From: Macrostomum hystrix
Lineage: Eukaryota; Animalia; Platyhelminthes
Assembly (NCBI GenBank): GCA_950097015.1
Contig: CATNEN010000008.1
Location: 3,162,001 to 3,226,000, forward strand
DNA length: 64,000 nucleotides
Direction: 5' to 3'
Shown here: piece by piece, positions 368 through 62,706 of the stretch
How the letters are laid out: each line of letters starts with the position of its first letter
Numbering within the stretch: the stretch's first letter is position 1
The notes under the pieces: generated by a model
What the model was told of the DNA's origin: nothing
What the model saw: only the letters and a program-made list of their open reading frames with translations
Database searches by the model: none
Program-made: the position numbers and the translations under genes

Positions 368-3300
368 TCAGCACACGTACACGCCGTGGGTGGCGTTCTC
401 AAGATTGCAGTCGGAGTTCTCATACTCTGCACCTCTCGCTGTCTGCTGACTCAGGGCCTGAACCTGAAGCTCCGTTTCTCTACTGCGGCTCTGCTGTTGA
501 TTAAGTGAAAATCTCATGTACAAAATGCTCAGCTACATTCTAACACAAGCATGGTCCGGGCCAGAGAAAACACGTACCAAGCCGATGTGCTCCGACTGGT
601 CCGAACGCACAACCCCTCGGCAACAGCGGGGAAGAGCAAGACTGATAACACCGAGCTGCAAGCGAAAAAGCTCGACGAGTGAACTCACGCAAAGTGGTGG
701 ACATAGGTTCAAAGCGAAGAGGTGGACGTAGGTTCAATGCGAGGAGGCGGACGTAGGTTCAAGGCGAAGAGGTGGACGTAGGTTCAATGCGTGGAGGCGG
801 ACGTAGGTTCAATGCGAGGAGGCGGACGTAGGTTCGAGGCGAGGAGGTGGACGTAGGTTCAAGGCGAAGAGGTGGACGTAGGTTCAATGCGAGGAGGCGG
901 ACGTAGGTTCGAGGCGAGGAGGCGGACGTAGGTTCAATGCGAGGAGGCGGACGTAGGTTCAAGGCGAATTGGTGGACTTGGTTCAATGCGAGGAGGCGGA
1001 CGTAGGTTCAAGGCGAGGAGGCGGACGTAGGTTCAATGCGAGGAGGTGGACGTAGGTTCAGTGCGAGGAGGCGGACGTAGGTTCAATGCGAGGAGGCGGA
1101 CGTAGGTTCAATGCGAGGAGGCGGACGTAGGTTCAATGCGAGGAGGCGGACGTAGGTTCGAGGCGAGGAGGCGGACGTAGGTTCAATGCGAGGAGGCGGA
1201 GGTAGGTTCAATGCGAGGAGGCGGACGTAGGTTCAATGCGAGGAGGCGGACGTAGGTTCAATGCGAGGAGGCGGACGTAGGTTCAATGCGAGGAGGCGGA
1301 CGTGGGTTCGAGGCGAGGAGGTGGACGTAGGTTCAATGCGAGGAGGCGGACGTAGGTTCAAGGCGAAGAGGTGGACGTAGGTTCAAGGCGAAGAGGTGGA
1401 CGTAGGTTCAAGGCGAAGAGGTGGACGTAGGTTCAAGGCGAAGAGGTGGACGTAGGTTCAAGGCGAAGAGGTGGACGTAGGTTCAAGGCGAAGAGGTGGA
1501 CGTAGGTTCAAGGCGAAGAGGTGGACGTAGGTTCAAGGCGAAGAGGTGGACGTAGGTTCAAGGCGAAGAGGTGGACGTAGGTTCAAGGCGAAGAGGTGGA
1601 CGTAGGTTCAAGGCGAAGAGGTGGACGTAGGTTCAAGGCGAAGAGGTGGACTTATTTCAATGCAACAACACTCACCCAGATCAGTGCTGCCAACACACTA
1701 CCTATCAAAATGACTGCCGAAGAGAAGCCCCAGAAGAAGGACATCCTGAGCCTGCTCTTTGGAGTTGATCTAATCGTAGATTCACAAGTTCGCCCTGTTT
1801 GTAAGGTTTGTCCTGTCAGATTTTTTTGTTCAGATAACAAAAAAGTTGGACCTGTGGGTCGTGGGTCTGTGGGTTTGAATAATAAACTCAATAAATCGAA
1901 GCGAAATACTCGTAGAAGGCGACATCTATAAGACGAAAGGAAACCTCAATGAGTATAACTAGCAAGTTGAACTCACTACAGAACGACGAAGTGTTCTTTT
2001 AAGTTTACACAAACTGAAATTGGTTCTCATTTGTGTCCGCTCATTTTTAAATTGGTTCCCTTTCGATAAATGTTTTTTGGGAAATTGTCCTTTCGTAATC
2101 CCTTTAGATTAAATGTTTTACCTTGGACTCAGTTTTTTCGTAATTTAGTTTTCCTTGATATCCTTAATCACAACATCTATTATCCCTTGGATATCCCATT
2201 CCGCTCACTGATCTCTCATTCTCTCTCCCTTCCCCCGTTCTGATTGGTCCCCAACTGCTAAATATATTTTTCACTCACCCACTGTCTAGCCCCACCCCAC
2301 TGCCCCACTGGTGGTTTGTGAACCACCAGTCTTAAAAGTGCAATGCTGGGCCTGCTGCTTCCAGTATGCGCTCCTTTAAACAAGGGCTTTTTCAAACCAG
2401 CAAGCAAGTATTTTGATGTGATTTTACTCTCTTGTTTTCTCTACATCTCGAGTTCCCATTCTACAGGTTAGAATGGGATTTCCTAATTGTCATAAATCAG
2501 TTTTATGCAGCATTAGGCATGGAATCAAGATAAACCTAACATATTTCGAACTAGCCGAGTTTTATCTGCAGCCTGAGATCGGCAAAGCTCATGACGTCAT
2601 CATCACTGGTTTCCGGCACTTTGTTCAACACAAACTTCCTCAGCAGCAGGATGCGAGCCTTTTCTGTCTGTAGTGAAATGAAGCATCAATCATCAGTGTT
2701 TACATCAATCAATCATCAGTGTTTACATCAATCAATAATCAGTGTTTACATCAATCAATCATCAATCATTACAGTCGGCACTCACAAACAATAAGCAAAA
2801 GTCCAACATACCATGGGAGGATTGTCACATGACACAGTAATGTTCTCTCCAGCACTGATGCCACCCGGTGTTCTGTTCACAGCACCACAGAATCTCCAGT
2901 CGAACTTCGGATCCTTAAACTGGCTGCTCATCTGCCGTGCATTGCAATGGTCTGTTTGGAACACTTCATCCGATTTCGATGTCCAAATTTCTACACCAAT
3001 TAGTCTGTTGTAGTAGAAAGCACTGTAGTCTGGAAAACATCAAGAGGTTATCTTCTCAGAGATAAAATGTTCATTCATGTGGTCACATTTAGTGCGAAAA
3101 AGTAACACTGCAGTTGCTTAGCAACCGTGATAGAATATAGGGATAGTTGAAATTGGCAAGGAGCTGATCTTTGACTGTGTTTTAACAAACGACACTCACC
3201 CTCTAGGCCCTTTAATGTGACAGATAATATGAGCACTGGCTCACTCAGCTGCACTGCAAACCAGTGAAATCCCTCGTCTGATTCATTTTTGCCAGCGCTG

Positions 3301-3592
3301 TGAAAGAACCTGTAGCTGATGCTTTTACTGCTCAAAACAGACTCCTCGTCAGCCTGGCTTCTGTTGTTAAAGCAAGTTTGACCATCACCGAATGACGACT
3401 GCCATGAGTTGAGCACTCGGCTTCTTCGAATGGGGAGCTCAGCTGAAAATGGCAGCGCTATCACGTCGGTAAAAGGCTTGACAAAGATTACACAAAGATT
3501 ACACAACGATTACACAACGAAAACTTACATTTGTCACTCGCTTTTGCAAGCAAAATAAGGAAAAAATAAATAAGTGAGTTTTTAAAGCTCAT
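368..3592 (-). CDS. G1: F-type-lectin-like single-pass receptor with class A tail (SP-FTLD-TM-EYENS/GVYVC)
   Basis: Manually spliced exons (minus): 3592-3529 SP MSFKNSLIYFFLILLAKASDK; 3442-3200, 3029-2812 and 2667-2556 FTLD; 1794-1676 plus 655-578 TM SAVILIGSVLAALIW|LGVISLAL followed by PRCCR; 493-368 tail QSRSRETELQVQALSQQTARGAEYENSDCNLENATHGVYVC*. Phases are consistent. The donor after 2556 is GC rather than GT. Confidence 0.8.
697..1651. repeat. 25-bp minisatellite GGCGAAGAGGTGGACGTAGGTTCAA in the intron splitting the G1 TM
   Basis: Direct tandem units with two variant classes. Confidence 0.95.
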
Positions 3593-3647
3593 TTTAAAGA
3601 CTTATTTGACACACGCAAATGATTTCTTCCGTAAATTAATGGCAATT
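1807..3647 (-). repeat. Left arm of a ~1.84-kb inverted duplication (partner 5482-7331)
   Basis: Reads as the reverse complement of 5482-7331 along its length; the ORF track shows mirrored, near-identical ORFs (e.g. 3075..3506- and 5632..6063+). Confidence 0.92.
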
Positions 3648-4599
3648 TAAAATGGCAGCAGCAGCAGACTGGGGATGTTGAGCATTCAGCTGGAGTTGGC
3701 TGAGAACAGCTGATGAGTCTGTCCAGTAGATCGATTGGAAACAATTCTGCTTCACAATAATTTTAGGCTAGCGATAGCTTTGCTTAATAAGATGGCGCAG
3801 TAGATCTCTGTTATTCGGTATTAATATTTATGCTCGTATTTATAATTTCATGCGCGTCCCAGCTATTATAGGAATAGCAGATCGAAATCTTCAAGGGCTA
3901 GGGCCAATTTGGCTGTGAAGCTTTCAAAACCTGTACGTTTATCTTCCTGTGCTTTCTGTGGTGTAGAAATTTGGTGAATTTTAATTAAGTTCAGATTTTT
4001 CTAGACAGAACTTCAGTGCGACCTAAATTTTCTGCATTAGTCAGATCAGCAAATTTTTAGCTTTGAAAATTCAAATTGTCGCATTGACCGACGTGTCTCA
4101 GCCGCAACCCAGCCGCATCACTTTTTACAATCACTTGTACCACATGCAAAATCCGTCTTTCCTAATAGATTTTGACTAGATTTCATTGTACCACACGTTA
4201 AATTATCATCATATTGCTAAATATGTCACTTTTGAAGGCATCAAATTTCGGGATTTAAAAAAATCGGTGCTGCTGGCATTGGCTGATCACCGGCGCCCTC
4301 GCTTCTGACTAGATTATTGCACCGTTTTTAGCAAAAAATCATCGTCTGAAGTTTTAATGAAGTCATTCACGGCAGCAAATGGTCTTCTCTCTCCGAAAAT
4401 AGAATACATACGGCCTGTACCACATTTGTACCACCTCAAGCACATATTTTTATACAACCCTGTGCAAAATTAAGCATTTTGATCAAATGGTTTGAAAGTT
4501 ATAGACAAAATCCTTCGTTCAAATCTCGAAGGGGACAGTCGATACCCACGCCATAGAAGTTAGCAAAAAGTGTGGCTACCCAATAATATTTCTTAGGAA

Positions 4600-5240
4600 G
4601 TTGGCAGGATTCCGAACAGTCAGATTTAAACAGCTAATGCTGTCCTGCACAGACATCGAAAGCTTAGTCCTGTATGCCTCAGAGGTCTGGGCGCCTTTGT
4701 TTCCTGGAACTTGGGACCCTGGGATCGATAAAAACTAAATACTAATACTACAATTCAGTCAAAATACTGACAGCAATGGGGCCCGATCAGAAACTGGTAG
4801 ACTGCCTCTATTGCATGATATACAGAAAAGAAGCTTCCAGTTCTGGTCATCCCTATCTCATCGCCCTCCATTCTATCCTGGCTATTCGGGCTTCATTATA
4901 TCTAAGCTTATACGGGACCCGGAATACAGCGAAATAGGCATTGCAACAAAAATGAGTAGTGTTGTACTGCGAAACTGTTCTCTGAGCTCAAAGACAAAGT
5001 CTGTTAAAATTCACAGGGAAAACTTTCAATGCGATTTCCTGGGACACTGGAGACAGAGGGTCAAAATTCTGGCCATGCGTTCTGTTCGCCCGAAAATCCC
5101 TTATGAAAGCAGAATTTGCCCGAAGTGCAAAGTCGGGTTCGAAAATAAAGTACATTTTCTTTTCCGGTGGAACTGGGATCCTTATAAGGCGGTCAGGGAA
5201 AATTTCGTGGGAGAAATTTTATCCATAGTAAAGAACTTTT
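4600..5240 (+). mobile_element. LINE 3' fragment in the spacer between G1 and G2
   Basis: ORF 4811..5335 RSVRPKIPYESRICPKCKVGFENKVHFLFRW is homologous to the 19473-20230 copy. Confidence 0.7.
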
Positions 5241-5481
5241 GTGGTCTCGCAGCAATACAAGCGATACAAGCGATACCCCCAGAACAGTGCAGCACAATGC
5301 CTGTGCATAAGCTTGTGCTGTGCACAACCACCTAGGCGACCGTTCATTGGACTGTACAGCTTTTAAAAATTCATGTTGGCCAGCAGGAAATAACTTTTCA
5401 AACGGTGGGTTTATTATCTAGGCCTGGAGGCGTTGACTAAAAATGAACACGTAATTAACTGCGTTTCAAGATTTCCATTAG

Positions 5482-7331
5482 TTGCTATTAATTTACGGAA
5501 GAAATCATTTGCTTGTGTCAAATAAGTCTTTAAAATGAGCTTTACAAACTCACTTATTTATTTTTTCCTTATTTTGCTTGCAAAAGCGAGTGACAAATGT
5601 AAGTTTTCGTTGTGTAATCGTTGTGTAATCTTTGTGTAATCTTTGTGTAATCTTTGTCAAGCCTTTTACCGACGTGATAGCGCTGCCATTTTCAGCTGAG
5701 CTCCCCATTCGAAGAAGCCGAGTGCTCAACTCATGGCAGTCGTCATTCGGTGATGGTCAAACTTGCTTTAACAACAGAAGCCAGGCTGACGAGGAGTCTG
5801 TTTTGAGCAGTAAAAGCATCAGCTACAGGTTCTTTCACAGCGCTGGCAAAAATGAATCAGACGAGGGATTTCACTGGTTTGCAGTGCAGCTGAGTGAGCC
5901 AGTGCTCATATTATCTGTCACATTAAAGGGCCGAGAGGGTGAGTGTTGTTTGTTAAAACACAGTCAAAGATCAGCTCCTTGCCAATTTCAACTATCCCTA
6001 TATTCTATCACGGTTGCTAAGCAACTGCAGTGTTACTTTTTCGCACTAAATGTGACCACATGAATGAACATTTTATCTCTGAGAAGATAACCTCTTGATG
6101 TTTTCCAGATGACACTACAGCTTTCCAATACAACAGACTAATTGGGGTAGAAATTTGGACATCGAAATCGGATGAAGTGTTCCAAACAGACCATTGCAAT
6201 GCACGGCAGATGAGCAGCCAGTTTAAGGATCCGAAGCTCGACTGGAGATTCTGTGGTGCTGTGAACAGAACACTGGGTGGCATCAGTGATGGAGAGAACA
6301 TTACTGTGTCATGTGACAATCCTCCCATGGTATGTTGGACTTTTGCTTATTGTTTGTGAGTGCTGACTGTAATGATTGATGATTGATTGATGTAAACACT
6401 GATTATTGATTGATGTAAACACTGATGATTGATTGATGTAAACACTGATGATTGATGCTTCATTTCACTACAGGCAGAAAAGTCTCGCATCCTGCTGCTG
6501 AGGAAGTTTGTGTTGAACAAAGTGCCGGAAACCAGTGATGATGACGTCATGAGCTTTGCCGATCTCAGGCTGCAGATAAAACTCGGTTAGTTCGAAATAT
6601 GTTAGGTTTATCTTAATTCCATGCCTAATGCTGCATAAAACTGATTTATGAAAATTAGGAAATCCCATTCTGACCTGTAATAGAACTCAAGGTGTAGAGA
6701 AAACAAGAGTGTAAAATCACATAAAAAAACTTGCTTGCTGGTTTGAAAAAGCCCTTGTTTAAAGGAGCGCATACTGGAAGCAGCAGCTAGCAGGCCCAGC
6801 ATTGCACTTTTAAGACTGGTGGTTCACAAACACTCCTGGGGTGGCGTTAGACAGTGGGTGAGTGAAAAATATATTTAGCAGTTGGGGACCAATCAGAACG
6901 GGGGAAGGGAGAGAGAATGAGAGATCAGTGAGCGGAATGGGATATCCAAGGGATAATAGATGTTGTGATTAAGGATATCAAGGAAAACTAAATTACGAAA
7001 AAACGAAATCCAAGGTAAAACATTTAATCTAAAGGGATTACGAAAGGACGATTTCCAAAAAAACATTTATCGAAAGGGAACCAATTTAAAAATAAGTGGA
7101 CACAAATGAGAACCAATTTCAGTTTGTGTAAACTTAAAAGAACACTTCGTCGTTCTGTAGTGAGTTCAACTTGCTAGTTATACTCATTGAGGTTTCCTTT
7201 CGTCTTATAGATGTCGCCTTCTACGAGTATTTCGCTTCGATTTATTGAGTTTTATTATTCAAACCCACAGACCCACGACCCACAGGTCCAACTTTTTTGT
7301 TATCTGAACAAAAAAATCTGACAGGACAAAC
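5482..7331 (+). repeat. Right arm of the inverted duplication (partner 1807-3647)
   Basis: As for the left arm. Identity stops just upstream of the two different TM-exon acceptors. Confidence 0.92.
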
Positions 7332-7965
7332 CCTGACGTCAAATACGTGCACCTTCCAAGGGCGACTAACCAGCTGCTCAGCACTCGTCTTCATCGCGAG
7401 TACGCTGGTCTTGTGCATTCTGATCATCGCTTTCATCTGTGGATTTCTGCTGGTTCGTTTTTTTTAACTTTTGCTCGGTGATTTTGTTTTACTGCTTCTG
7501 TTGGAGCAACTTTCAAGCCGATGTGTCCTCAAACATTTCAGCTCAAACTAAAGCCCAACTGTGCTCGACAAAGTCCCGACTACCGGCTGAAACGGCGAAT
7601 GCCATCAAGCAGGATCTCCCAAGCTCCAATTGCTATCAAGGCACCTGTAGTGCCTCAGGTAAATTTTGCAAGTTGTCAGTTCGTGTTGTCAAAGGTTGTC
7701 AAATTCGACGGGCATGCACCTTGATTATGACAATTACCTGAAAATGTAATTCTGTCAGATTTCTTTTGCAAAGCAAATGTTTTGTAAGCCAACCTGCCTA
7801 CCATACCATCAGCAGCAGGTGGAGGCAGAGCTGTTGCCCAGCAACCCAGGTGAGTCCGAATGCAGCTACATGTCGCTGAGTTTAAGTAAAGCAGCCCCCA
7901 ACAATGACCTGGAGGAGGACTGCGCCAGCGACTGCACCGTCTACATCGAAATTGTACGTGGCTGA
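5535..7965 (+). CDS. G2: F-type-lectin-like single-pass receptor with class B ITIM/ITSM-like tail
   Basis: Exons: 5535-5598 SP MSFTNSLIYFFLILLAKASDK; 5696-5938, 6109-6329 and 6474-6585 FTLD; 7361-7452 TM SALVFIASTLVLCILIIAFICGFLL; 7542-7658; about 7819-7965 tail ...SECSYMSL...SDCTVYIEIVRG*. All GT-AG, open frame. Confidence 0.85.
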
Positions 7966-9779
7966 TCTCAAGTCTGCTCTAATACGAGTCGAGACATTTG
8001 AGTTTAAAATTATTACAGTCGTTCTTACAAGCCAGATAGCATCAAGTTAAGACAGTTATTTCAGTCATGGCCGCAAACTGTGCCTGCCTACTCTTGCACT
8101 TTCAAGCTGTTTTGACATGCGTCAATACTCAATCGATTTTGTCTTAAAAAGTTAATACTCTTGATCTTCATCTATCCGCTGCATGAATTTTGTTAAAATC
8201 GAGATTTTATATTTGATAAACATTCTGTCAACATGTTGGGAATGTTTAATAATAATGAAAAACATATACACACTGGCTCCAGCATTCCTGGAACATATTT
8301 GCTGGTTTCACAATTCAAAATTTGAAACCTCCTAATTATAGACATGCAGCACACATGCCTCCAGGTATTCTTGGCTTTATTATTTAGAAGTCTGGAACGC
8401 CTGAAATAAATCAAGGTTGGTTCTGATGAATTTTGCTTTCACCAGATAAACCGGAAGCCATCACAGCAACAGTTGCAGGCGCTTGGTGCCATTCTCAAAT
8501 TCCAGCAGATTATGAACATGTATAAACACGATGTGTGGATTATTACTAAATGTATTGCAATAATTTGACCTAAGTCACGTTATAAACTTTTGGCATTGCT
8601 TAACGTAAACTGCACGACAAGCCGCCAAACCTTCTCCCCGCTGCTGCGTCCAAAATTAATGTGCCCCGCCGCAGAATAGAGCTCAAGGACCATCATGCGA
8701 GAGGCAAACCCGTTAGTCCGCTTCTCCACTCACCCCCTCGACATAGACTTGCAAAAGATGGAAAGTTTTTCTAAAACATTTTCTCTTCAGGTGAGTTTCC
8801 CATTCGCCAGGGTCGAGTGCTGAGTTCGTGGCAGTCATGGGACTTGACGGCCAGCTCTGCTTCCATAACAAGTCGAGTTACTCAGAGAACGCAGACTCAA
8901 ACAGCGTAAGGTTCAGCTTGAGATTTTTTCACAGCTCTAACAGCAGCCAAGTAGATGGTGGATTTCACTGGTTCGGAGTGCAGCTGAATGAGTCACTGTG
9001 AAGGGCAGAGAAGGTAGGCAGTAAAGTGCAGAATATGCAAGTAGGTCTACGTACACCGCTTCAACTCACTGCCGTCACATTTCAGAAGGCAGAGCGGAAG
9101 GCATTGAGATCTGGGCATCAGACAGCCGTGAAATATTTTCAGGCCATCACTGCAGATCGAGCAACATTAGCAGACAGTTTGAGGAGTCTCGGTTGCTATG
9201 GAGACGGTGCGGCACTACACAGAGAGAACATCAGGAAATTTTGGCTGGTGAAGTCTTCACTGTGGAATGCACCGCTAGTGTGAGAGCTTTAATAAAGTAC
9301 TCGCCTATTCACACACCGCATATACCAGCTGAAATTATGGAATTCGTTGAATAACCCGCAGGTCCGCCAGCTGCTACTCCGCAAGGACGTCACCCGAGCT
9401 AATGCTAACAGCTTCCTGGAATTCGCGGATCTCAGACTTCAGACATTGCAACTAAGTAAAGCTCTTATTTCACTTACGAAATGAGGCCTTAACAGTAGAT
9501 CACACAATTTTAAATGGTATTTCAAATACCCACAGATCACTTCACGATGGCCACAAAACCGAATGAAAATCCACCATCTGGATCAAACTTTTCCGCTCTA
9601 TACGATGAACTAACTTTCAAAGCCGTCCGAGTCAAAAAGAAAAAAACTACCAGTAACAACATAATCAATACAATATTGGCAACAATAATAGCAGGCATGG
9701 TTAAATTGTTAAATGTTGAAATTTTGTGAGCAGAAAAATTATGCCTAATTGCCGCTTGTATTTGTGTCGGACTTGGCAC

Positions 9780-13098: not shown

Positions 13099-13099
13099 A

Positions 13100-14120: not shown

Positions 14121-14147
14121 CGACTCACCCCCTTAATGGCCCACCAC

Positions 14148-51288: not shown

Positions 51289-51356
51289 GAGAATATGAGA
51301 TTATTTGGCCAAGAGCTATTGGCTCAAGGAATGAAATTTGGTGACACAATGTGTTT

Positions 51357-52331: not shown

Positions 52332-52547
52332 TCCACTCCCTTCACTCCATGCTGATTGACTGCATAGAGTTTGCTCCACTCCCTTAACTCCATGCTGATT
52401 GACTGCATAGAGTTTGCTCCACTCCCTTAACTCCATGCTGATTGACTGCATAGAGTTTGCTCCACTCCCTTCACTCCATGCTGATTGACTGCATAGAGTT
52501 TGCTCCACTCCCTTCACTCCATGCTGATTGACTGCATAGAGTTTGCT
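52332..52547. repeat. 43-bp array, about 5 units
   Basis: Unit CTCCACTCCCTTCACTCCATGCTGATTGACTGCATAGAGTTTG. Confidence 0.9.
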
Positions 52548-52854
52548 GCTGCTGCTGTTTACCCTAGATTTCCTTATTTTTTAACCTGGTGAGCGGATGT
52601 TATAATGCGACTCAAATGTATTCAGTGTACAGGCAAGTCCGTTGTTAACAGATATTCTAATAAATAACAATTAAACCTACCCTGAATTTGGTTTCTGTAG
52701 CCACGGGAGAACCAGTTGAGACCCATGCAAGACAGTCCAGCCATCACAATAGCTGGCAGTGCTTTTGTGATGTCGCCAAACAGCACTATCCATTGTCTGG
52801 TAATTCAGAATTCTCTAGTAATTCTCAAGTACTTTTCAAGTAGAATGCGTCTTA

Positions 52855-55705
52855 AGTAATTCTCAAATTCTCCAATTCTCTAATTCTCTAATTCTCTAAT
52901 TCTCTAATTCTCTAATTCTCTAATTCTCTAATTCTCTAATTATCTAATTATCTAATTCTCTAATTCTCTAATTCTCTAATTCTCTAATTATCTAATTATC
53001 TAATTCCCTAACTATCTAATTGTCTAATTGTCTAATTCTCTAATTCTCCAATTCTCAAATTCTCTAGTAATTCTCAAGTACTTTTCAAGTAGCATAAGTC
53101 TTAAGTAATTCTCTAATTCTCTAATTCTCTAATTCTCTAATTATCTAATTCCCTAACTATCTAATTGTCTAATTCTCTAATTCTCTAATTCTCCAATTCT
53201 CAAATTCTCTAGTAATTCTCAAGTACTTTTCAAGTAGAATGCGTCTTAAGTAATTCTCCAATTCTCTGATTCTCAAATTCTCAAATTCTCTAATTCTCTG
53301 ATTCTCAAATTCTCAAATTCTCTAATTCTCCAATTCTCTGATTCTCTAATTCTCTAATTCTCTAATTCTCCAATTCTCTGATTCTCAAATTCTCTAATTC
53401 TCTAATTCTCTAATTCTTTAATTCTCTAATTCTCCAATTCTCTGATTCTCCAATGCTCTGATTCTCTAATTCTCTAATTCTCTAATTCTCTGATTCTCTA
53501 ATTCTCTGATTCTCAAATTCTCTAATTCTCTGATTCTCCAATTCTCTAATTCTCTGATTCTCCAATTCTCTAATTCTCTAATTCTCTAATTCTCTGATTC
53601 TCAAATTCTCTAATTCTCTGATTCTCCAATTCTCTAATTCTCTAATTCTCTAATTCTCTGATTCTCAAATTCTCTAATTCTCTGATTCTCCAATTCTCTA
53701 ATTCTCTAATTCTCTAATTCTCTGATTCTCAAATTCTCTAATTCTCTGATTCTCCAATTCTCTAATTCTCTAATTCTCTAATTCTCTAATTCTCCAATTC
53801 TCTAATTCTCTAATTCTCTAATTCTCTAATTCTCTAATTCTCTGATTCTCTAATTCTCTAATTCTCTAATTCTCTAATTCTCTAATTCTCTAATTCTCTA
53901 ATTCTCCAATTCTCTAATTCTCTAATTATCTGATTCTCCAATTCTCTAATTCTCTAATTCTCTGATTCTCTGATTCTCTAATTCTCTAATTCTCTGATTC
54001 TCTGATTCTCTAATTCTCTAATTCTCTGATTCTCTAATTATCTGATTCTCCAATTCTCTAATTCTCTAATTCTCTGATTCTCAAATTGTCCGATTCTCTA
54101 ATTCTCTAATTCTCTAATTCTCTAATTCTCTGATTCTCTAATTCTCTAATTCTCTAATTCTCTAATTCTCTAATTCTCTAATTCTCTAATTCTCTGATTC
54201 TCTAATTCTCTAATTCTCCAATTCTCTAATTCTCTAATTCTCCAATTCTCCGATTCTCTAATTCACAGATTCTCAGATTTTCTAATTCTCTAATTCTCTA
54301 ATTCTCTAATTCTCTGATTCTCTAATTCTCTAATTCTCTAATTCTCCAATTCTCTAATTCTCTAATTCTCTAATTCTCCAATTCTCTAATTCTCTAATTA
54401 TCTGATTCTCCAATTCTCTAATTCTCTAATTCTCTAATTCTCTGATTCTCTGATTCTCTAATTCTCTAATTCTCTAATTCTCTGATTCTCTAATTCTCTA
54501 ATTCTCTAATTCTCTAATTCTCTAATTCTCTAATTCTCTAATTCTCTAATTCTCTTATTCTCTAATTCTCTAATTCTCCAATTCTCTAATTCTCCAATTC
54601 TCTAATTCTCTAATTCTCTAATTCTCTAATTCTCTAATTCTCTAATTCTCTAATTCTCTAATTCTCCAATTCTCTAATTCTCTAATTCTCTAATTCTCTA
54701 ATTCTCTAATTCTCTGATTCTCTAATTCTCTAATTCTCTAATTCTCTAATTCTCTAATTCTCTAATTCTCTAATTCTCCAATTCTCTAATTCTCTAATTA
54801 TCTGATTCTCCAATTCTCTAATTCTCTAATTCTCTGATTCTCTGATTCTCTAATTCTCTAATTCTCTGATTCTCTGATTCTCTAATTCTCTAATTCTCTG
54901 ATTCTCTAATTATCTGATTCTCCAATTCTCTAATTCTCTAATTCTCTGATTCTCAAATTGTCCGATTCTCTAATTCTCTAATTCTCTAATTCTCTAATTC
55001 TCTGATTCTCTAATTCTCTAATTCTCTAATTCTCTAATTCTCTAATTCTCTAATTCTCTAATTCTCTGATTCTCTAATTCTCTAATTCTCCAATTCTCTA
55101 ATTCTCTAATTCTCCAATTCTCCGATTCTCTAATTCACAGATTCTCAGATTTTCTAATTCTCTAATTCTCTAATTCTCTAATTCTCTGATTCTCTAATTC
55201 TCTAATTCTCTAATTCTCCAATTCTCTAATTCTCTAATTCTCTAATTCTCCAATTCTCTGATTCTCCAATTCTCTAATTCTCTAATTCTCTAATTATCTG
55301 ATTCTCCAATTCTCTAATTCTCTAATTCTCTAATTCTCTGATTCTCTGATTCTCTAATTCTCTAATTCTCTAATTCTCTGATTCTCTAATTCTCTAATTC
55401 TCTAATTCTCTAATTCTCTAATTCTCTAATTCTCTGATTCTCTAATTCTCTTATTCTCTAATTCTCTAATTCTCTGATTCTCCAATTCTCTAATTCTCTG
55501 ATTCTCTAATTCTCTAATTCTCTAATTCTCTAATTCTCTAATTCTCTAATTCTCTGATTCTCTAATTCTCTGATTCTCTAATTCTCTTATTCTCTAATTA
55601 TCTAATTCTCTGATTCTCTAATTCTCTAATTCTCTAATTCTCTGATTCTCCAATTCTCTGATTCTCCAATTCTCAAATTCTCCAATTCTCTAATTCTCTA
55701 ATTCT
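52855..55705. repeat. 8-bp satellite (TTCTCTAA)n, ~2.85 kb
   Basis: Direct tandem units with variants. Confidence 0.97.
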
Positions 55706-56321
55706 CACGAGAGACAATGTCAAGGCAATGACAACTAAAGCAGAATGACTCAAGACCCGTAATTCTTGCAGAAGCTGTTGAAGGCCAAATACAGTAGCAA
55801 AAAATTTATTTTTCTATGGCTATCATCAATAATTAAATCAAATCCGTGTGTTATGACCTTATGAGATAGCTGATTGTATTTTTTTGACTTGCGAGAGGTT
55901 TTCTGTTGGTTTACAAAATATTTTTTCTGTTTAAGCTCTCAACAGAAACTCAAAAAAGTTTCTGTTGAGAGCTTAAACGACCTTTTAGTAGGCCGTTAAA
56001 TTCAAACCACAGTGTGAAAATACAAGGCTCTGTAGCCTAGTGGGTAGAGCGTCAGGCTCACGAGGCTTGAAGGTCGGAGGTTCGTTTCCCGACTCCACTT
56101 GAAAACAATTCGTAATTTAGCAAGAAACTTTACTCGCCCGGCTGTTAAATGGGAACCAGAATGAGCTGGGTGTGGAGCTCTCAGTGAGGACTAAAATGGC
56201 TGAAACACCTGCATCGATTAACCAGACGACTAAAATATAACAATCCATACCAGACAACATATAGTTCTGTTGACCAGAGGAAATTCTGCAAGTCCACATA
56301 CAATTCTTCTCTATTACATCA

Positions 56322-56995
56322 TATTCCCGACCATGACATAACATTCCCGACCATGACATAACATTCCCGACCATGACATAACATTCCCGACCATGACATA
56401 ACATTCCCGACCATGACATAACATTCCCAACCATGACATCACATTCCCGACCATTACATCATATTCCTGACCATGACATAACATTCCCGACCATGACATC
56501 ACATTCCCGACCATGACATAACATTCCCTACCATGACAATAGGGAATTGCACGAAATATGGTGCACCTCCGCCGGTCGCTACTGTCCAAACCCCCCCAAC
56601 AAGTCCCGAAATTAATCGTGACTTGAAGGGTGAATCGAACTGGCGTCCTTTGGAGTGCGAGGCAGCGACGTTAGCCGCTGACCCACTCGCCCCCTGACCA
56701 TGACATCACATTTCCGACCACGACATTACATTCCAAACCATCAACATCACATTCCCGACCATGACATAACATTCCCGACCATGACATCACATATCCGACC
56801 ATGACATCACATTTCCAAACATCAACATCACATTCCCGACCATGACATAACATTCCCGACCATGACATAACATTCCCGACCATGACATCACATTTCCGAC
56901 CATTACATCACATTCCCGACCATTACATCACATTTCCAAACATCAACATCACATTGCCGACCATCAACATCACATCGCCGACCACTAACATAACA
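56322..56995. repeat. 20-bp array CATGACATAACATTCCCGAC interrupted by a SINE family 2 copy
   Basis: Units lie on both sides of 56540-56692. Confidence 0.92.
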
Positions 56996-57311
56996 TTATA
57001 AACCACTCCATCACAATTTACTTTCTACTAACATCTCGTGTACTTAAGTTTATATCAATTGCGTATATATTACTGTCTGTGACTGGTCTAAATGAAAACC
57101 CCTGCTTACTACTAAGTGTAAGTAGTGAAATCGACATAAAAACGTCAGTTATCAATGGTGAAAAACTGAAATTTGCAGTGAAGATAAGTGAAAGTGAACA
57201 TAAACAAGGCCTGTCTACCCAGCCACAGAGTGGCCAGCAGTGATTTATATTCACTAGAAGTCAAGTCCACTGGACGGCACAGCAAAGCCGAAAATGAGAG
57301 ACAAAACAGAC

Positions 57312-60300
57312 ATGACAGCTGCTGCACTGATCATCCTGCTGACTGCCTCCCACTGCCTCTGCACCTGCCTGTGCGACTGTGAGTAAGGGAGAAGAGCAAA
57401 AAGAGAAGAGTGAGTGAGTGAGTGAGTGAGTGAGTGAGTGAGTGAGTGAGTGAGTGAGTGAGTGAGTGAGTGAGTGAGTGAGTGAGTGAGTATGTGAGTG
57501 AGCGAGTGAGTGAGTGAGTGAGTGAGTGAGTGAGTGAGTGAGTCAGCGAGTGAATGTGTAAGTGAGTGAGTGAGTGAGTGAGTGAGTGAGTAAGTGAGTG
57601 AATGTGTAAGTGAGTGAGTGAGTGAGTGAGTGAGTGAGTGAGTGAGTGAGTGAGTGAGTGGGTGAGTGAGTGAGTAAGTGAGTGAGTGAGTGAGTGAGTG
57701 AGTAAGTGAGTGAATGTGTAAGTGAGTGAGTGAGTGAGTGAGTGAGTGAGTGAGTGAGTGAGTGAGTGAGTGAGTGAGTGAGTGAGTGAGTAAGTGAGTG
57801 AGTGAGTGAGTGAGTGAGTGAGTGAGTGAGTGAGTGAGTGAGTGAGTGAGTGAGTGAGTGAGTGAGTGAGTGAGTAAGCCATATTGATTTCAGAACTGCT
57901 TTTCGAATTTCAGGTGATGTGCTGATTCGCAACCACAGCTTGAGCGGTGCCTGGCAGTCGTCTCACGGTTATGGACAGAGTTGTTTTCAAACGCGAGCTT
58001 CTGAAAGAGAGAAAAATGAAACGGAATCGAAATTCAAATTATTCATCCACAGCAATGACAGCCGGTATGCAGTGGGAGGATTCCACTGGTTCGCAGTGCA
58101 GCTGAAGAAACAGGCTCTCATCAGATCGGTCACTGTGAAGGGCACAAGTGAGTCTCTGATTTTGAGTATACTCTCGTGGATGCTGCTGCACTAAAAGCAG
58201 TCTGAGACGACAAAAGCAATAGAAGCAGGTATTCTACCGTGAAGCGTCAAGTGCTAAACTGTCATTCTAAAATTGCAATTCAGGTAGCACAGCAACGCTC
58301 GGCAGGTCAGCCGGAATCGAGATTTGGACATCGAGCTCAAGCCAGCAGCTGCTCTCTGGAGACCACTGCTTCTCAAAAGACAGCAGCAGGCAGTTTGAGC
58401 AGCACCTGAGCAGCTGGAGCCTCTGCGGCACCACTGCGAACAAGCCGAGCATCTCACCTGCTGAGAAATTTCAAGTGGACTGCGTGGCTGAGGTGAGTTC
58501 ATGCAGCAGACTCAAGTACTTTGATCAGCTCGAGACTCAGTGACAGAGATGTGAATTTCAGGTGCGATACCTGCTGCTCAGAAGAAACTGCTCATTCAAC
58601 TTCAGTGCGGGCGACAATGGCTACCTGCACATTGCGGATCTGTCTTTGCAAACTATGAAGCCAGGTGAGGTTGAAGTTAACAGAGTTTTCTGCGTTTTTA
58701 ATTTCTGGTCTTTGATTTCCTTTTTCTGTCGTATAAACTAAAGCTTTTGGGGAGAGTGGCGGTAACGCATCTGACAATTGTAATAAAGTCATGAGCTCGA
58801 ACCTTCGGCGAGGCCACATTCAGCGAGAATTCATGACACCGTGTTCAAACACAAGGCACAGTGAGAGTGTACACTGCCTGACGAGGAGAAAGTCAGAGCA
58901 GATGTACACACTTGCATGAGTGTGTGCCTGCGTACGGTATCTGTGTGCGTGTGTGCTCAGGAGTCTCCTCGCTGGTTGCGGGTCTTCAGTCACCAAAGGA
59001 TGTGCCATTGCCCAAGGCCCTCCGCTAGTTATTATTCATATTACTCTGCGTATTGCGACAACATTTCCTCGGCTTGTCCCCGAACTGCCGACACCATTCC
59101 CAATCTCTTCAGCGCTATCAGCTGAGCGGGTGGTGGCAGTGAACACTTCATTTTCGCTGAACTGCTCACTGCTCTGCTTGGACTCCGGCCTGAGCACAAA
59201 CTTGAGCAGGCCACAGCTCTGCTTTCCAAACGGCAGCTGCACCAATGAACTCCAGCTGCTGATCGGCAGTGCTCAGCCCTCGCACTCGGGAAACTACTCC
59301 TGCAGGCTGGGCTCCGTTGAAGACTCAAGCTCCGTCTCCGTGCTGTGTGAGCTCTTGTTGAATGGTTTAGCGTCCGTGTCTGGCTTTAGTTGATTGCCTA
59401 GATTACCTTGAATTCAATGCTGCGAGAGTGAAAAGTTGAGTTCATGATGTTTGCAGATCCACCATCAAGAGTGGCAGTCTCATTTGACAGCTGTCAGAGC
59501 CTGTCAGATGTGATGGTGCAGTTCAGCTCATCTGCAGCTCAGCCGGTGCCTGAGCACAGGTGCAGCGCTCATTTCAGTTGCACTGGAGCTTCGGTCAATC
59601 TCACCTTCCTGTCACAGGTGAGATTCCTTGCTCATTATTCTACTTGCTGTCGTGCATCACCTTTAAGTGCCACTTTTGAGCATGCGAGGAGACGATTTTC
59701 TGAGCATTGCATCGCTCCCTAGCACACTCACACACGCCCCAGCACACAGGCATGAACTGAACAATGAACTGGACACCCACAGCGGCACTGACATATTGTT
59801 AGACGATGTACATACTCTGCGAGACTCTGGACTTTCCACTCATTAGCTCAGATGGGACCCCCAAACAAAGACTGTCTTGAATTCGTATGCATCATTAGCT
59901 CAGATGGGACCCCCAAACAAAGACTGTCTTGAATTCGTATGCATCATTAGCTCAGATGGGACCCCCAAACAAAGACTGTCTTGAATTCGTATGCAGGGAC
60001 CATGTTCCGATAATCGTGTGTGTAACCGCTCCGCCACTTCACTCCGCCAGAACTCGGCGGACAAAGACTTGATCAGCAGGTGGACATTCGGCAGAGAAGC
60101 CTCGGAGATGCGGCAGTGCAATGCCAGTGCGCTGGTGCTGAAGTGCAGCGCAGTGCAGACTCTGCCCGAGGGGATCAGCTTCCAGTCGGTGCACACGGAT
60201 GAGAGGATGTGGGAGTGCAGTCTGAGCACAGACCGTCACTATGCCGTTCATGCCATCATCGTGAGCACAGTTGTGTGCTCAATTCTGGCGGTACTCATAC

Positions 60301-62706
60301 TCGGGAGTGTTCTGCGATTCCTAACTACTCAGGTTTGTGAGCTGCTTTCCTAGAATTCAGCAAGTCTGTGAAATCTAAGTTAACTCGAATAAAATTGAGC
60401 TTGAGCTTGGCTTTTTTATTAAATCCGACATAAATCAGAATCTAAGAAAAAGTGTCTTAGAGGAACACAAGGTGAATAAAAATTGAAGCATGTTGAATTT
60501 GTTTAAGAAACGAATAAGTTCCTTATCTGTTTATCACATTAAGAAACGCAACAGACCGGGACCCGCCGCTGCTGCTGCTGCCACTTTTGAAAGCTTGCAC
60601 ACTGCTGCTGAAACTGCACAAGCTGCTGAAGATGAAATTTCTAACAGTCCCGCCTCTGGCGTAAGTGATCAGTTTTGGTGCCACGACTCGAAGAAATTGC
60701 ACTTCAGCAAGCTTGCTTTTTTAATTAGTAATGCTCTGTGTTCAATTAATTCCTTCACTGATGGGATAGACTAGCAATCCATTCTGTTCCTTCACTGATG
60801 GGATAGACTAGCAATCCATTCTGTTCCTTCAATGATGGGATAGACTAGCAATTCATTCTGTTCCTTCACCCATGGGATAGACAAGCAATCCATTCTGTTC
60901 CTTCACTGATGGGATAGACTAGCAATCCATTCTGTTCCTTCACCCATGGGATAGACTAGCAATCCATTCTGTTCCTTCACTGATGGGATAGACTAGCAAT
61001 CCATTCTGTTCCTTCACCCATGGGATAGACTAGCAATCCATTCTGTTCCTTCACTCATGGGATAGACTAGCAATCCATTCTGTTCCTTCACTGATGGGAT
61101 AGACTAGCAATCCATTCTGTTCCTTCACTGATGGGATAGACTAGCAATCCATTCTGTTCCTTCACCCATGGGATAGACTAGCAATCCGTTCTGTTCCTTC
61201 ACTGATGGGATAGACTAGCAATCCATTCTGTTCCTTCACTGATGGCATAGACTAGCAATCCATTCTGTTCCTTCACCCATGGGATAGACTAGCAATCCAT
61301 TCTGTTCCTTCACTGATGGGATAGACTAGCAATCCATTCTGTTCCTTCACTGATGGGATAGACTAGCAATCCATTCTGTTCCTTCACTCATGGGATAGAC
61401 TAGCAATCCATTCTGTTCCTTCACCCATGGGATAGACAAGCAATCCATTCTGTTCCTTCACTGATGGGATAGACTAGCAATCCATTCTGTTCCTTCACTG
61501 ATGGGATAGACTAGCAATCCATTCTGTTCCTTCACCCATGGGATAGACTAGCAATCCATTCTGTTCCTTCACCCATGGGATAGACTAGCAATCCATTCTG
61601 TTCCTTCACCCATGGGATAGACTAGCAATCCATTCTGTTCCTTCACTGATGGGATAGACTAGCAATCCATTCTGTTCCTTCACCCATGGGATAGACTAGC
61701 AATCCATTCTGTTCCTTCACTCATGGGATAGACTAGCAATCCATTCTGTTCCTTCACTGATGGGATAGACTAGCAATCCATTCTGTTCCTTCACCCATGG
61801 GATAGACTAGCAATCCATTCTGTTCCTTCACTGATGGGATAGACTAGCAATCCATTCTGTTCCTTCACTGATGGGATAGACTAGCAATCCATTCTGTTCC
61901 TTCACCCATGGGATAGACTAGCAATCCGTTCTGTTCCTTCACCCATGGGATAGACTAGCAATCCATTCTGTTCCTTCACCCATGGGATAGACTAGCAATC
62001 CATTCTGTTCCTTCACTCATGGGATAGACTAGCAATCCATTCTGTTCCTTCACCCATGGGATAGACAAGCAATCCATTCTGTTCCTTCACTGATGGCATA
62101 GCTTAGCAATCCATTCTGTTCCTTCACTGATGGGATAGACTAGCAATCCATTCTGTTCCTTCACCCATGGGATAGACTAGCAATCCATTCTGTTCCTTCA
62201 CCCATGGGATAGACTAGCAATCCATTCTGTTCCTTCACTGATGGGATAGACTAGCAATCCATTCTGTTCCTTCACTGATGGGATAGACTAGCAATCCATT
62301 CTGTTCCTTCACCCATAGGATAGACTAGCAATCCATTCTGTTCCTTCACCCATGGGATAGACTAGCAATCCATTCAGTTCCTTCACTCATGGGATAGACT
62401 AGCAATCCATTCTGTTCCTTCACTCATGGGATAGACTAGCAATCCATTCTGTTCCTTCACTGATGGGATAGACTAGCAATCCATTCTGTTCCTTCACTGA
62501 TGGGATAGACTAGCAATCCATTCGCGAACATCCGCCTGTTGCTCTGGCAGGCTGTCGGAGTGTCGCAGGCGGAATGCTGCTATGATTCGCTGATGCCTTC
62601 GACCTCCTACTCAGCCTCGGTGCTGATGAAGGCTGGCGCCGACGATCTGTGGGAGTCAGAGAGCGACTGCACGGTGTACTTGGAAATCGTTGCTGACAGG
62701 ATCTGA
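57312..62706 (+). CDS. G7: SP-FTLD-Ig-proximal-TM receptor with class B ITIM/ITSM-like tail
   Basis: SP 57312-57378 MTAAALIILLTASHCLCTCLCD; FTLD 57914-58147, 58284-58492, 58562-58664; Ig 59113-59346; proximal 59457-59617; TM exon 59997-60332 (HAIIVSTVVCSILAVLILGSVL); cytoplasmic exon about 60544-60660 (acceptor uncertain); tail 62551-62706 ...AECCYDSL...ESDCTVYLEIVADRI*. Confidence 0.8.
57740..60396 (+). repeat. Direct segmental duplication copy 2 (partner ~48590-51288)
   Basis: As for copy 1. Differs by a longer SINE remnant and a different copy number of the 52-bp repeat. Confidence 0.92.
58755..59030 (+). mobile_element. SINE family 1 copy (its duplicate at 49690-49810 lacks ~120 nt)
   Basis: Shares CGGCGAGGCCACATT and the hairpin segment. 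Confidence 0.6.
60745..62522. repeat. 37-bp array TTCCTTCACTGATGGGATAGACTAGCAATCCATTCTG
   Basis: Fills the last intron of G7. Confidence 0.97.

What the first reader, a model, noticed from the sequence alone, without database searches (positions are those of the whole stretch)
368..62706. Cluster of seven lectin-Ig-TM receptors with tyrosine signalling tails: a candidate invertebrate Siglec-like immune or allorecognition family
Seen: seven spliced genes share one exon toolkit (SP, 3-exon lectin-like domain, 1-exon Ig-like domains, proximal domain, TM, Tyr tail) with ectodomains from 1 to about 15 domains. Established: F-type lectins have the order QSS, H, W.VDL, V..V.I.NR.D..R, EI, CG, C, RY, L...EV, which these exons follow (WQSS, FFHS, HWFAVQL, IRSVTVKGRED..R, IEIWTS, CG, FTV.C, VR.LLLR, YMSFADL.L). 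Siglecs pair a glycan-binding domain and Ig stalk with ITIM+ITSM tails; snail FREP/CREP/GREP proteins pair Ig with other lectin domains. Inference: this FTLD+Ig+ITIM/ITSM combination is a convergent glycan-sensing receptor system. I do not recognise it as a described family.
Basis: partly seen in the sequence, partly recalled or inferred. Interest (0 to 1): 0.92.

Follow-up and report, generated by a model that had tools for sequence, protein, structure and literature searches.

The report
Flatworm lectin-Ig receptor gene cluster
A Macrostomum flatworm carries seven neighbouring genes for single-pass membrane receptors, each with a fucose-lectin-like head, an Ig-domain stalk and a tyrosine-motif tail; the family is undescribed, seems confined to this genus, and its ligand and role are unknown.

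Summary
The window (a relative of Macrostomum lignano) has seven spliced genes at 368-62706. They share one exon toolkit: signal peptide, 3-exon lectin-like domain, 1-exon Ig domains, 2-exon proximal domain, TM, and Tyr-motif tail. RNA-like contigs confirm four GT..AG joints of G7.

Ectodomains range from 1 domain (G1, G2) to 13 (G4) and 15 (G5). G3 is disrupted and G6 has a premature stop.

The lectin-like domain models confidently (pLDDT 87) as a galactose-binding-domain-like jellyroll. F-type lectins are the best fold and profile matches, but only just ahead of CBM32 and discoidin domains. All 12 domains tested lack the canonical fucose motif, the Ca motif and the Cys-Cys pair. It is therefore F-type-lectin-like, not a proven fucolectin. 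The Ig domains are genuine.

Tail B carries an ITIM-like motif plus a strict ITSM, 23-31 residues apart. Tail A ends EYENSEYKLE..GVYV. Both are conserved between species.

G1/G2 and G6/G7 are about 98% identical duplicates whose tails differ, a paired-receptor-like layout.

"Siglec-like" is an analogy, not membership. An immune or allorecognition role is untested.

The scan found this family before elsewhere in this genome (s1-278211).

The parts
368..3591 (-). G1: signal peptide (~3591-3525), lectin-like exons L1 3443-3198, L2 ~3020-2827 and L3 2658-2554, stalk/TM exon ~1945-1655, class A tail exon 532-368 (..EYENSDCNLENATHGVYVC-stop). One-domain ectodomain.
5535..7965 (+). G2: signal peptide 5535-5601, L1 5696-5941, L2 ~6105-6330, L3 6483-6587, stalk/TM exon 7250-7456, class B tail exon ~7750-7965 (ECSYMSL..x24..CTVYIEIVRG-stop). 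Inverted duplicate of the G1 ectodomain.
1805..7332 (.). Inverted duplication: 1805-3645 against 7332-5482, 97.9% identical over aligned bases. It covers SP, L1-L3 and the first part of the stalk/TM exon. Homology stops inside that exon, so TM and tails differ.
8790..15456 (+). G3, probably a pseudogene: L1 8790-8998 with a frameshift, L2 9088-9276, L3 9362-9451, an RT-bearing retroelement plus minisatellite inserted at ~9800-14100, Ig exon 14693-14923, tail B-like end 15403-15456 (DSDCCTEYIEIV). No convincing signal-peptide exon found.
17572..30742 (+). G4: SP 17572-17635, then L-Ig, L-Ig x4, L-Ig x4. Lectin cassettes start at 17712, 20997 and 24672. Ig exons are at 20295, 22390, 22717, 23032, 24318, 27022, 27384, 27935 and 28233. 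Proximal domain P1 28958-29079, P2/TM ~29216-29500, tail B 30578-30742 (ECNYLTV..x25..CTEYTEI). 13 ectodomain modules.
   Evidence: no RNA evidence
31541..46978 (+). G5: SP 31541-31610, L-Ig, then L followed by 11 Ig. Lectin cassettes start at 32006 and 34826. There are 12 Ig exons between 34495 and 42813, including a 97.6% internal duplicate (37445-38413 against 41167-42138). P1 42987-43156, P2/TM 43229-43500, a ~3 kb intronic minisatellite, and tail B 46814-46978 in which the ITSM Tyr is Phe (ECTYMSV..STLFIEIV). 15 modules.
   Evidence: no RNA evidence
48040..51954 (+). G6: SP 48040-48106, L1 48793-49026 with an in-frame stop (..SCF*TRAS..), L2 49163-49371, L3 49441-49543, Ig ~49910-50139, P1 50245-50405, P2/TM 50943-51228, class A tail 51826-51954 (EYENSEYKLEAATGVYVA-stop).
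57312..62706 (+). G7: SP 57312-57378, L1 57914-58147, L2 58284-58492, L3 58562-58664, Ig 59113/59122-59346, P1 59457-59617, P2/TM 60051-60336, class B tail ~62561-62706 (CCYDSL..CTVYLEIVADRI-stop). The tail acceptor is inferred.
   Evidence: RNA-like contig joints; assembly
48544..60399 (+). Direct duplication G6/G7: 48544-51291 against 57661-60399, 97.9% identical. It runs from L1 through the TM exon and ends about 60 bp after it; the tails are unrelated.

Best explanation
This is a tandem cluster of a Macrostomum-restricted multigene family of type I membrane receptors. Each protein has a signal peptide and one to three N-terminal or interspersed ~180-aa jellyroll domains of the galactose-binding-domain-like superfamily, closest to F-type lectins. 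It then has 0-12 short Ig domains lacking the conserved Trp, a ~110-aa membrane-proximal beta-sandwich in most members, one TM helix, and a short cytoplasmic tail of one of two conserved classes.

Most likely mechanism (inferred, not shown):
- The jellyroll head binds an extracellular ligand. This is probably a glycan, but not fucose in the canonical AAA manner.
- The Ig stalk sets reach and valency.
- After ligand clustering, tail tyrosines are phosphorylated by Src-family-type kinases.
- Tail B (ECxY[ML][ST][LV], then 23-31 residues, then T[VE]Yx E I) would recruit a tandem-SH2 phosphatase of the SHP-2/Corkscrew type, as ITIM-ITSM receptors do.
- Tail A (EYENSEYKLE..GVY[VI]x-COOH) offers a pYxN site of the Grb2/Drk type and a C-terminal hydrophobic end.
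- Recent duplications (G1/G2, G6/G7) kept the ectodomain and swapped the tail. This gives pairs that would see the same ligand and signal differently.

Because every domain cassette is phase 1-1, exon skipping could also vary ectodomain length.

The confidence of 0.6 is for the whole statement. The architecture alone I put at about 0.9, and the glycan-plus-SH2-phosphatase mechanism at about 0.35.
For: Architecture, shown:
- Exon inventory and order.
- RNA-like GT..AG joints for G7, absent from a DNA run.
- Open in-phase assemblies of G4 and G5.
- M. lignano proteins with the same SP-lectin-Ig-proximal-TM-tail order.

Head fold:
- AlphaFold2 model with pLDDT 87 and pTM 0.87.
- Foldseek PDB rank 1 is MsaFBP32 F-lectin, E 3.4e-6.
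- VIA-align Z 12.4 and 12.3 for 3cqo and 1k12.
- The top four Swiss-Prot models are eel fucolectins.
- The family HMM against all PDB sequences ranks 1k12 and 3cqo first (E 0.016 and 0.037). It aligns HWFAVQL with PWWRVDL, SVTVKGRED with SVTITNRGD, and R..G.EI with R86..G.EI.
- ESM features point to PF22633/PF00754.

Ig domains: profile against PDB reaches E 3.6e-13 on multi-Ig receptors. Pfam Ig_2 or Ig_3 matches 15 and 14 of 26 exons.

Tails: SDCTVYLEIVAD is identical in G7 and M. lignano P0002, and EYENSEYKLE is shared by G6, P0003 and P0006, although heads are only 45-77% identical.

Pairs: 97.9% identical blocks that end in or just after the TM exon.

Restriction: 12 hits in 1.84e9 representatives, 7 in the 5.8e9 search, all Macrostomum except one metagenome contig and one spurious hit.
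Against: - No binding, phosphorylation or expression-site data exist.
- The canonical fucose triad motif, Ca motif and vicinal Cys pair are absent from 12/12 domains. In the HMM alignment the invariant FFHS His lines up with AAA His47, not the sugar-binding His52.
- The Arg79-equivalent is Leu in G1 and Thr in G6/G7.
- CBM32, galactose-oxidase and even DOC/IFT25 jellyrolls score Z 11-12, so 'lectin' is not forced by the fold.
- The first tail motif has Cys at -2, so it is not a strict ITIM. G5 has Phe for the ITSM Tyr.
- No activating-type charged TM residue is present in the A-tail partners.
- G3 and G6 look non-functional.
- RNA depth is low, about 3-8.
- The single-gene models for G4 and G5 rest on exon order and phase only.
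Confidence: 0.6

Rival explanations
1. Same proteins, different job. They would be cell-cell adhesion or mate/gamete-recognition molecules of a hermaphrodite under sexual selection, comparable to oyster F-lectin bindins. The jellyroll head would bind a partner protein or glycoprotein, and the tails would only tune adhesion or endocytosis (YxxPhi).
For: - F-type domains serve gamete recognition in oysters with 1-5 repeats (PMC5712786).
- The family is lineage-restricted and rapidly diverging.
- The number of head and Ig cassettes varies, and cassettes are phase-compatible.
- Most differences between the young duplicates are non-synonymous: 5 of 7 and 10 of 14.
- The sugar-binding motif is absent.
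Against: - No expression site is known.
- The tails are more conserved than the heads and match SH2-type motifs with ITIM-ITSM-like spacing.
- These are membrane proteins, not acrosomal secreted proteins.
Confidence: 0.2
2. The head is a generic discoidin/CBM32-class (FA58C-like) module, not specifically related to F-type lectins. The F-lectin top ranks would then be chance ordering within one superfamily.
For: - The only Pfam hits are sub-threshold PF00754, E 0.008-0.4.
- VIA Z for CBM32 and galactose oxidase is 11.6-11.9, against 12.4 for F-lectins.
- Atlas structure neighbours are mixed F5/8C-clan families.
- All F-type signature motifs are absent.
Against: - F-type lectins rank first in four partly independent searches, including a pure sequence-profile search of 177,635 PDB sequences.
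- They have the highest sequence identities, 18-20%.
- The aligned blocks match F-type core strands and Arg86.
- ESM features favour PF22633.
Confidence: 0.3
3. The long models G4 and G5 are not single genes. They would be arrays of several shorter genes and exon debris, and much of the cluster would be decaying duplicates rather than working receptors.
For: - G3 has a frameshift and a retroelement; G6 has a stop codon.
- G5 has a 97.6% internal duplicate and a Tyr-to-Phe tail.
- No listed RNA run was found for 31900-37800.
- M. lignano database models are short (about 200-430 aa), and some fuse or skip exons.
Against: - There is no signal-peptide, TM or tail exon between 17635 and 28958, or between 31610 and 42987.
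- All 40 exons are open with in-phase AG/GT sites.
Confidence: 0.15

Closest known systems
F-type lectins (eel agglutinin AAA 1k12, striped bass MsaFBP32 3cqo, lectinolysin FTLD)
   Same: Jellyroll fold. They are the best fold and profile matches. The conserved core blocks W-x-V-x-L, SVT-x-x-x-R-x-D and R-x-x-G-x-E-I are shared. The domain is tandemly repeated and variable within one genome.
   Different: The domain is ~180 aa rather than ~140 aa. There is no HX24RXDX4(R/K) motif, no h2DGx calcium motif and no Cys82-Cys83 pair. The loop after R-x-D is longer. The Arg79-equivalent is lost in three copies. The domain sits on a membrane receptor with Ig domains, a partner not listed among FTLD co-occurring domains in PMC5712786.
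Drosophila furrowed / CG9095 (FTLD + CTLD + CCP repeats + TM)
   Same: An F-type-like domain at the tip of a type I membrane protein with a repeat stalk. The basic triad is degenerate in CG9095.
   Different: The stalk is CCP/sushi, not Ig. There is no ITIM/ITSM-type tail. It is a single conserved gene, not a lineage-specific cluster.
Vertebrate ITIM-ITSM receptors (CD33-related Siglecs, PECAM-1, PD-1) and paired receptor families (KIR, LILR, PIR, paired Siglecs)
   Same: A lectin or ligand-binding head on an Ig stalk. A membrane-proximal YxxL/V motif plus a distal TxYxx(V/I) motif about 23-31 residues apart. Clustered, rapidly duplicating genes. Pairs with near-identical ectodomains and different tails.
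   Different: The head is a jellyroll, not a V-set Ig with the sialic-acid Arg. The first motif has Cys at -2. The alternative partner has no charged TM residue or ITAM adaptor logic, but its own YENS/YKLE/GVYV tail. There is no homology, so any similarity is convergent.
Invertebrate diversified recognition families (snail FREP/CREP/GREP, Hydractinia Alr IgSF cluster, oyster bindin)
   Same: Lineage-specific, clustered, fast-evolving combinations of Ig and lectin-type modules. The Ig domains have atypical sequences. Alr genes also carry ITIM/ITAM-like tails (PMC9546547, listed; not read).
   Different: FREPs are secreted and place Ig N-terminal to a fibrinogen, C-type or galectin domain. Alr genes have no lectin head. 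Bindin is secreted and consists only of FTLDs.

Membership tests
F-type lectin domain (FTLD, sensu Vasta et al. 2017, PMC5712786) | F-type jellyroll beta-barrel fold | tested here: met
   Model pLDDT 87. 3cqo and 1k12 are the top Foldseek and VIA matches, Z 12.4 and 12.3. Eel fucolectins top the Swiss-Prot search. CBM32 and galactose-oxidase domains are only about 0.5 Z lower.
F-type lectin domain (FTLD, sensu Vasta et al. 2017, PMC5712786) | Fucose-binding motif H-X24-R-X-D-X4-(R/K), i.e. His52/Arg79/Arg86 of AAA | tested here: not met
   A regex allowing X24-27 matches 0 of 12 domains, 7 from the window and 5 from M. lignano. The HMM alignment puts the invariant His on AAA His47. The R79-equivalent is present in most copies but is L in G1 and T in G6/G7. 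The R86-equivalent is invariant, but the loop is about 10 residues, not 4.
F-type lectin domain (FTLD, sensu Vasta et al. 2017, PMC5712786) | Calcium-binding motif h2DGx and vicinal Cys82-Cys83 | tested here: not met
   No [VAI][VAI]DG[NDS] and no CC in any of the 12 domains.
F-type lectin domain (FTLD, sensu Vasta et al. 2017, PMC5712786) | Recognition by curated family models (Pfam PF22633 / PF00754 gathering score) | tested here: not met
   The best score is PF00754 at 16.7 bits against a cut-off of 28.2. PF22633 scores 14.5 against 27.8.
F-type lectin domain (FTLD, sensu Vasta et al. 2017, PMC5712786) | Binds L-fucose or fucosylated glycans | not testable with these tools
   Needs recombinant protein and glycan arrays.
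Immunoglobulin superfamily domain | Sequence-profile similarity to Ig domains, with the B-strand Cys and the Y-x-C F-strand motif | tested here: met
   The profile of 26 exons hits MDGA1, FCRL5, contactins and Fc receptors at E 3.6e-13 and above. Ig_2 matches 15/26 and Ig_3 14/26. C18, C67 and G63 are invariant and Y65 is nearly so.
Immunoglobulin superfamily domain | Conserved C-strand Trp | tested here: not met
   The 26-sequence alignment has no conserved Trp column. Extra Cys pairs are present instead (C-x-L-H-C and L-C-x-P-N-G-x-C).
Siglec | N-terminal V-set Ig domain with the conserved sialic-acid-binding Arg | tested here: not met
   The N-terminal domain is a galactose-binding-domain-like jellyroll, not Ig.
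Siglec | Cytoplasmic ITIM (S/I/V/L-x-Y-x-x-I/V/L) plus a distal ITIM-like/ITSM motif | tested here: inconclusive
   The ITSM T-x-Y-x-x-I is strict in G2, G3, G4, G7 and M. lignano P0002. The first motif is C-x-Y-x-x-L/V, with Cys at -2. In G5 the ITSM Tyr is Phe.
Paired activating/inhibitory receptors (KIR/LILR/PIR type) | Near-identical ectodomains with different signalling tails in neighbouring genes | tested here: met
   G1/G2 and G6/G7 are each 97.9% identical through the ectodomain, and homology ends in or just after the TM exon.
Paired activating/inhibitory receptors (KIR/LILR/PIR type) | Activating partner with a short tail and a charged TM residue that recruits an ITAM adaptor | tested here: not met
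   The TM segments of G1 and of G6/G7 have no Lys, Arg, Asp or Glu in the core. G6 and G7 share the same TM. Tail A has its own Tyr motifs and no ITAM.

The most novel reading that the evidence does not exclude
Flatworms would have independently built a paired, polymorphic recognition-receptor system. A jellyroll lectin-like head on an Ig stalk is coupled either to an SHP-2-type inhibitory ITIM-like/ITSM tail or to a Grb2-type YxN tail. It is expanded in several clusters (one next to a JAK-like kinase, according to unchecked notes) and would be used for non-self, microbe or mate discrimination. That would be a convergent counterpart of Siglec/KIR-type systems in an animal with no described immune receptors of this kind.
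Probability: 0.15. Interest if true: 0.85.

Novelty: new variant of a known kind. Interest (0 to 1): 0.6.

Why it matters
Platyhelminth innate recognition and signalling receptors are poorly known. M. lignano is a transgenic, RNAi-tractable model for regeneration, ageing and sexual selection.

A genus-restricted, clustered, fast-duplicating family that joins an F-type-lectin-like head to Ig stalks and SH2-type tyrosine tails has three uses:
- It is a concrete candidate for self/non-self, microbe or mate recognition.
- It would be an example of convergent ITIM-ITSM-style and paired-receptor logic outside deuterostomes.
- It is a divergent branch of the F-type/discoidin fold whose ligand chemistry must differ from the canonical fucose triad.

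The practical value now is a set of gene models that automatic annotation fragments or mis-fuses. UniProt names these proteins Sushi, CUB, fibrinogen, LamG or Ig.

Tried and rejected
- Pfam on single exons gave nothing for the lectin exons.
- No RNA run was listed for 31900-37800, so G4 and G5 have no transcript test. Reads were laid on G7.
- Supplements of two M. lignano papers were searched for the homologues Mlig021334, Mlig026357 and Mlig014586 to get expression sites. Nothing was found.
- Literature searches for Macrostomum with lectin, for F-type lectin with Platyhelminthes, and for ITIM gave no description of the family.
- The M. lignano locus of the divergent member P0010 is a solitary gene next to an integrin alpha, not a cluster.
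- The metagenome homologue P0009 could not be placed taxonomically because no DNA was served.
- The proximal-domain model is weak (pLDDT 67) and only faintly resembles V-type Ig (E about 0.01, TM 0.3-0.5), so I left it as 'beta-sandwich, possibly Ig-like'.
- ITAM and hemITAM readings of tail A were considered and rejected, because no YxxL/I pair is present.
- ARAGORN found no tRNA in the SINE-like repeats.
- A profile-profile test against an FTLD alignment was not run, because no FTLD sequences were available by reference.

Full report
**What the window is**

The sequence is animal DNA with short GT..AG introns, many intronic minisatellites and retroelement debris. Every protein homologue found is from the free-living flatworm Macrostomum lignano (UniRef/NCBI), apart from one 1.6-kb metagenome contig and one spurious low-complexity hit. 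The best identity of those proteins to the window is about 77%. The window therefore comes from a Macrostomum relative, or from paralogues not in the databases.

**Check of the observation**

- Motif scans and tblastn find ten copies of lectin exon L1 (..WQSS..FFHS..GFHWFAVQL..SVTVKGRE), each followed by L2 (..IEIWTS..DHC..CG..VxC) and L3 (VRYLLLR..YMSFADLxLQT).
- There are 24 single-exon Ig-like domains and a two-exon membrane-proximal domain.
- TM exons and two kinds of tail exon follow.
- Signal-peptide exons ending ..D|C in phase 1 lie upstream of five genes (G2, G4, G5, G6 and G7 at 5535, 17572, 31541, 48040 and 57312), and the minus-strand gene G1 has its own at about 3591.

These exons group into the seven genes listed under parts.

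**Transcript evidence**

For G7, contigs of three runs (X3-X5) carry four exact GT..AG joints: 57378>57914, 58147>58284, 58490>58560 and 59614>60048. The record does not state the library kind of these runs. A DNA run (X1) covers the same introns and shows none of the joints. The Ig exon is covered up to its predicted donor at 59346.

With these joints G7 reads as an uninterrupted SP-lectin-Ig-proximal-TM protein.

G4 and G5 have no RNA test, because none was listed for 31900-37800. Their 20 exons each can nevertheless be joined through in-phase AG/GT sites into open frames of at least 1346 and 1395 aa. No SP, TM or tail exon lies in between. They would carry 3 lectin + 9 Ig + 1 proximal domain and 2 lectin + 12 Ig + 1 proximal domain.

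**Corrections**

- G3 has a frameshifted L1 and an RT-bearing element inserted in it.
- G6 has an in-frame stop in L1.
- L2|L3 and P1|P2 meet in phase 0. Each whole domain cassette is still phase 1-1.

**The head domain**

No Pfam model reaches threshold, on exons or on full M. lignano domains. The best is PF00754 at 16.7 bits against 28.2.

I aligned M. lignano domains with the window's exons (A3) and obtained a confident AlphaFold2 model: pLDDT 87.2, pTM 0.87, all-beta. The search results were:

| Search | Best matches |
|---|---|
| Foldseek, PDB | MsaFBP32 F-lectin first (E 3.4e-6), AAA fourth, among CBM32/F5-8C modules |
| VIA-align, PDB | 3cqo Z 12.4 and 1k12 Z 12.3, with the highest identities (18-20%); galactose oxidase, CBM32, chitosan-binding and IFT25 jellyrolls follow at Z 11-12 |
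| Foldseek, 550,129 Swiss-Prot models | Top four are eel fucolectins |
| Family HMM against 177,635 PDB sequences | Only 1k12 (E 0.016) and 3cqo (E 0.037) ahead of noise |

The HMM alignment pairs HWFAVQL with PWWRVDL, SVTVKGRED with SVTITNRGD, and R..G.EI with R86-I-S-G-A-E-I. ESM-Atlas features and shapes give the same clan.

The family definitions in Vasta et al. 2017 (PMC5712786) are not met:

- The HX24RXDX4(R/K) motif, the h2DGx calcium motif and the Cys82-Cys83 pair are absent from all 12 domains tested.
- The invariant FFHS His aligns with AAA His47, not His52.
- The Arg79-equivalent is Leu in G1 and Thr in G6/G7.

I therefore call the domain F-type-lectin-like. Glycan binding remains an inference.

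**Stalk and proximal domain**

A profile of 26 Ig exons hits multi-Ig receptors (MDGA1, FCRL5, contactins, Fc receptors) at E 3.6e-13 and above. Pfam Ig_2 or Ig_3 matches about 15 of 26. The B and F cysteines and Y-x-C are conserved, the C-strand Trp is missing, and two extra Cys pairs are present.

The proximal domain models weakly (pLDDT 67) as a beta-sandwich with faint V-Ig resemblance.

**Tails**

Class B is found in G2, G3, G4, G5, G7 and M. lignano P0002. It reads E-C-x-Y-[ML/D]-[ST]-[LV], then 23-31 residues, then S-D-(C)-T-[VE]-Y-x-E-I.

- The distal motif is a strict ITSM.
- The proximal motif has Cys at -2, so it is ITIM-like only.
- G5 has Phe in place of the ITSM Tyr.

Class A is found in G1, G6 and M. 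lignano P0003, P0006 and P0022. It ends EYENS(E/D)(Y/C)xLE.A..G(V/I)Y(V/I)x-COOH. It contains a YxN site and no ITAM.

Both tails are far better conserved between species than the heads. I read this as constraint on function. The SH2 partners I name are inferred from general knowledge of ITIM/ITSM and pYxN recognition. They were not tested.

**Paired layout**

- G1 and G2 are an inverted duplication (1805-3645 against 7332-5482). Homology breaks inside the stalk/TM exon.
- G6 and G7 are a direct duplication (48544-51291 against 57661-60399) that ends about 60 bp after the shared TM exon.
- Both pairs are 97.9% identical, and each couples a tail A to a tail B.
- Most exon differences are non-synonymous (5 of 7 and 10 of 14). 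In G1/G2 they concentrate at the start of L2, the loop equivalent to the F-type R-x-D..R loop. The numbers are too small to show selection.

**Comparison and novelty**

The architecture works like a lectin-headed, Ig-stalked ITIM/ITSM receptor. It is not a Siglec, because the head is not a V-set Ig. It is not a canonical FTL either.

According to PMC5712786, FTLDs co-occur with CTLD, pentraxin, CCP, TM and FA58C domains. Ig is not listed. However, an Atlas cluster with PF22633 plus I-set exists (weak lead).

I found no paper on this family. The scan has met the family before in other parts of this genome, and one earlier follow-up (s1-278211) reached a similar verdict.

My verdict is a new variant of known kinds: real, lineage-restricted, and of unknown biological role.

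Noticed in passing
window 9800-14100: A retroelement is inserted between L3 and the Ig exon of G3. A minus-strand ORF carries a YMDD-type reverse-transcriptase piece (Pfam RVT_1, E 0.003). It runs into a ~33-bp minisatellite at 12992-14038, 98% identical between copies.
   Followed up: partly
window 58799-59045, 30148-30618, 31860-31990, 32614-32940, 35615-35956, 8569-8771: These are copies of a short interspersed repeat that contains a tRNA-like stretch; ARAGORN calls no tRNA. The copy in the G7 intron has word depth around 1000-2000 in the RNA-like runs and about 380,000 in the DNA run, so it is an extremely abundant, transcribed SINE-like element.
   Followed up: partly
window 43565-46533; 52805-55710; 60750-62523; 25771-26922; 23263-24324; 38084-38917; 16293-16949; 689-1663: Almost every long intron or spacer of the cluster holds a kilobase-scale minisatellite with units of about 16-81 bp. 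The block at 52-56 kb is AT-rich (GC 0.32) with a strong negative GC skew (about -0.53).
   Followed up: no
window 37445-38413 vs 41167-42138: A 97.6% identical internal duplication in G5 copies two Ig exons, which are 100% identical at protein level, plus a minisatellite. It is either a very recent cassette duplication or an assembly artefact.
   Followed up: partly
window 58376-58383 (G7 exon L2): Three non-synonymous differences between samples (K>E in an RNA-like run; D>A and S>I in the DNA run) fall within 8 bases, at the same two codons where G6 and G7 differ (KDSS/KAIS). This may be a variable loop, gene conversion, or cross-mapping of G6.
   Followed up: partly
window 19473-19979 (-), 4811-5335 (+), 60-233 (-): Repeated ORF fragments share ..RTVRPKI..E(N/S)R(T/I)CPKC(R/K)V..EN.. 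motifs and have no Pfam hit. They are probably the C-terminal part of a non-LTR retrotransposon ORF scattered in the cluster's introns and spacers.
   Followed up: partly
M. lignano proteins P0001, P0003, P0015 (database models): Public gene models of the family skip L2/L3 (L1 joined directly to Ig), or read from a tail B exon straight into the next gene's L1 (..TVYLEI|FPIRR..). UniProt names members Sushi, CUB, fibrinogen, LamG or Ig. Annotation of the family is unreliable.
   Followed up: partly
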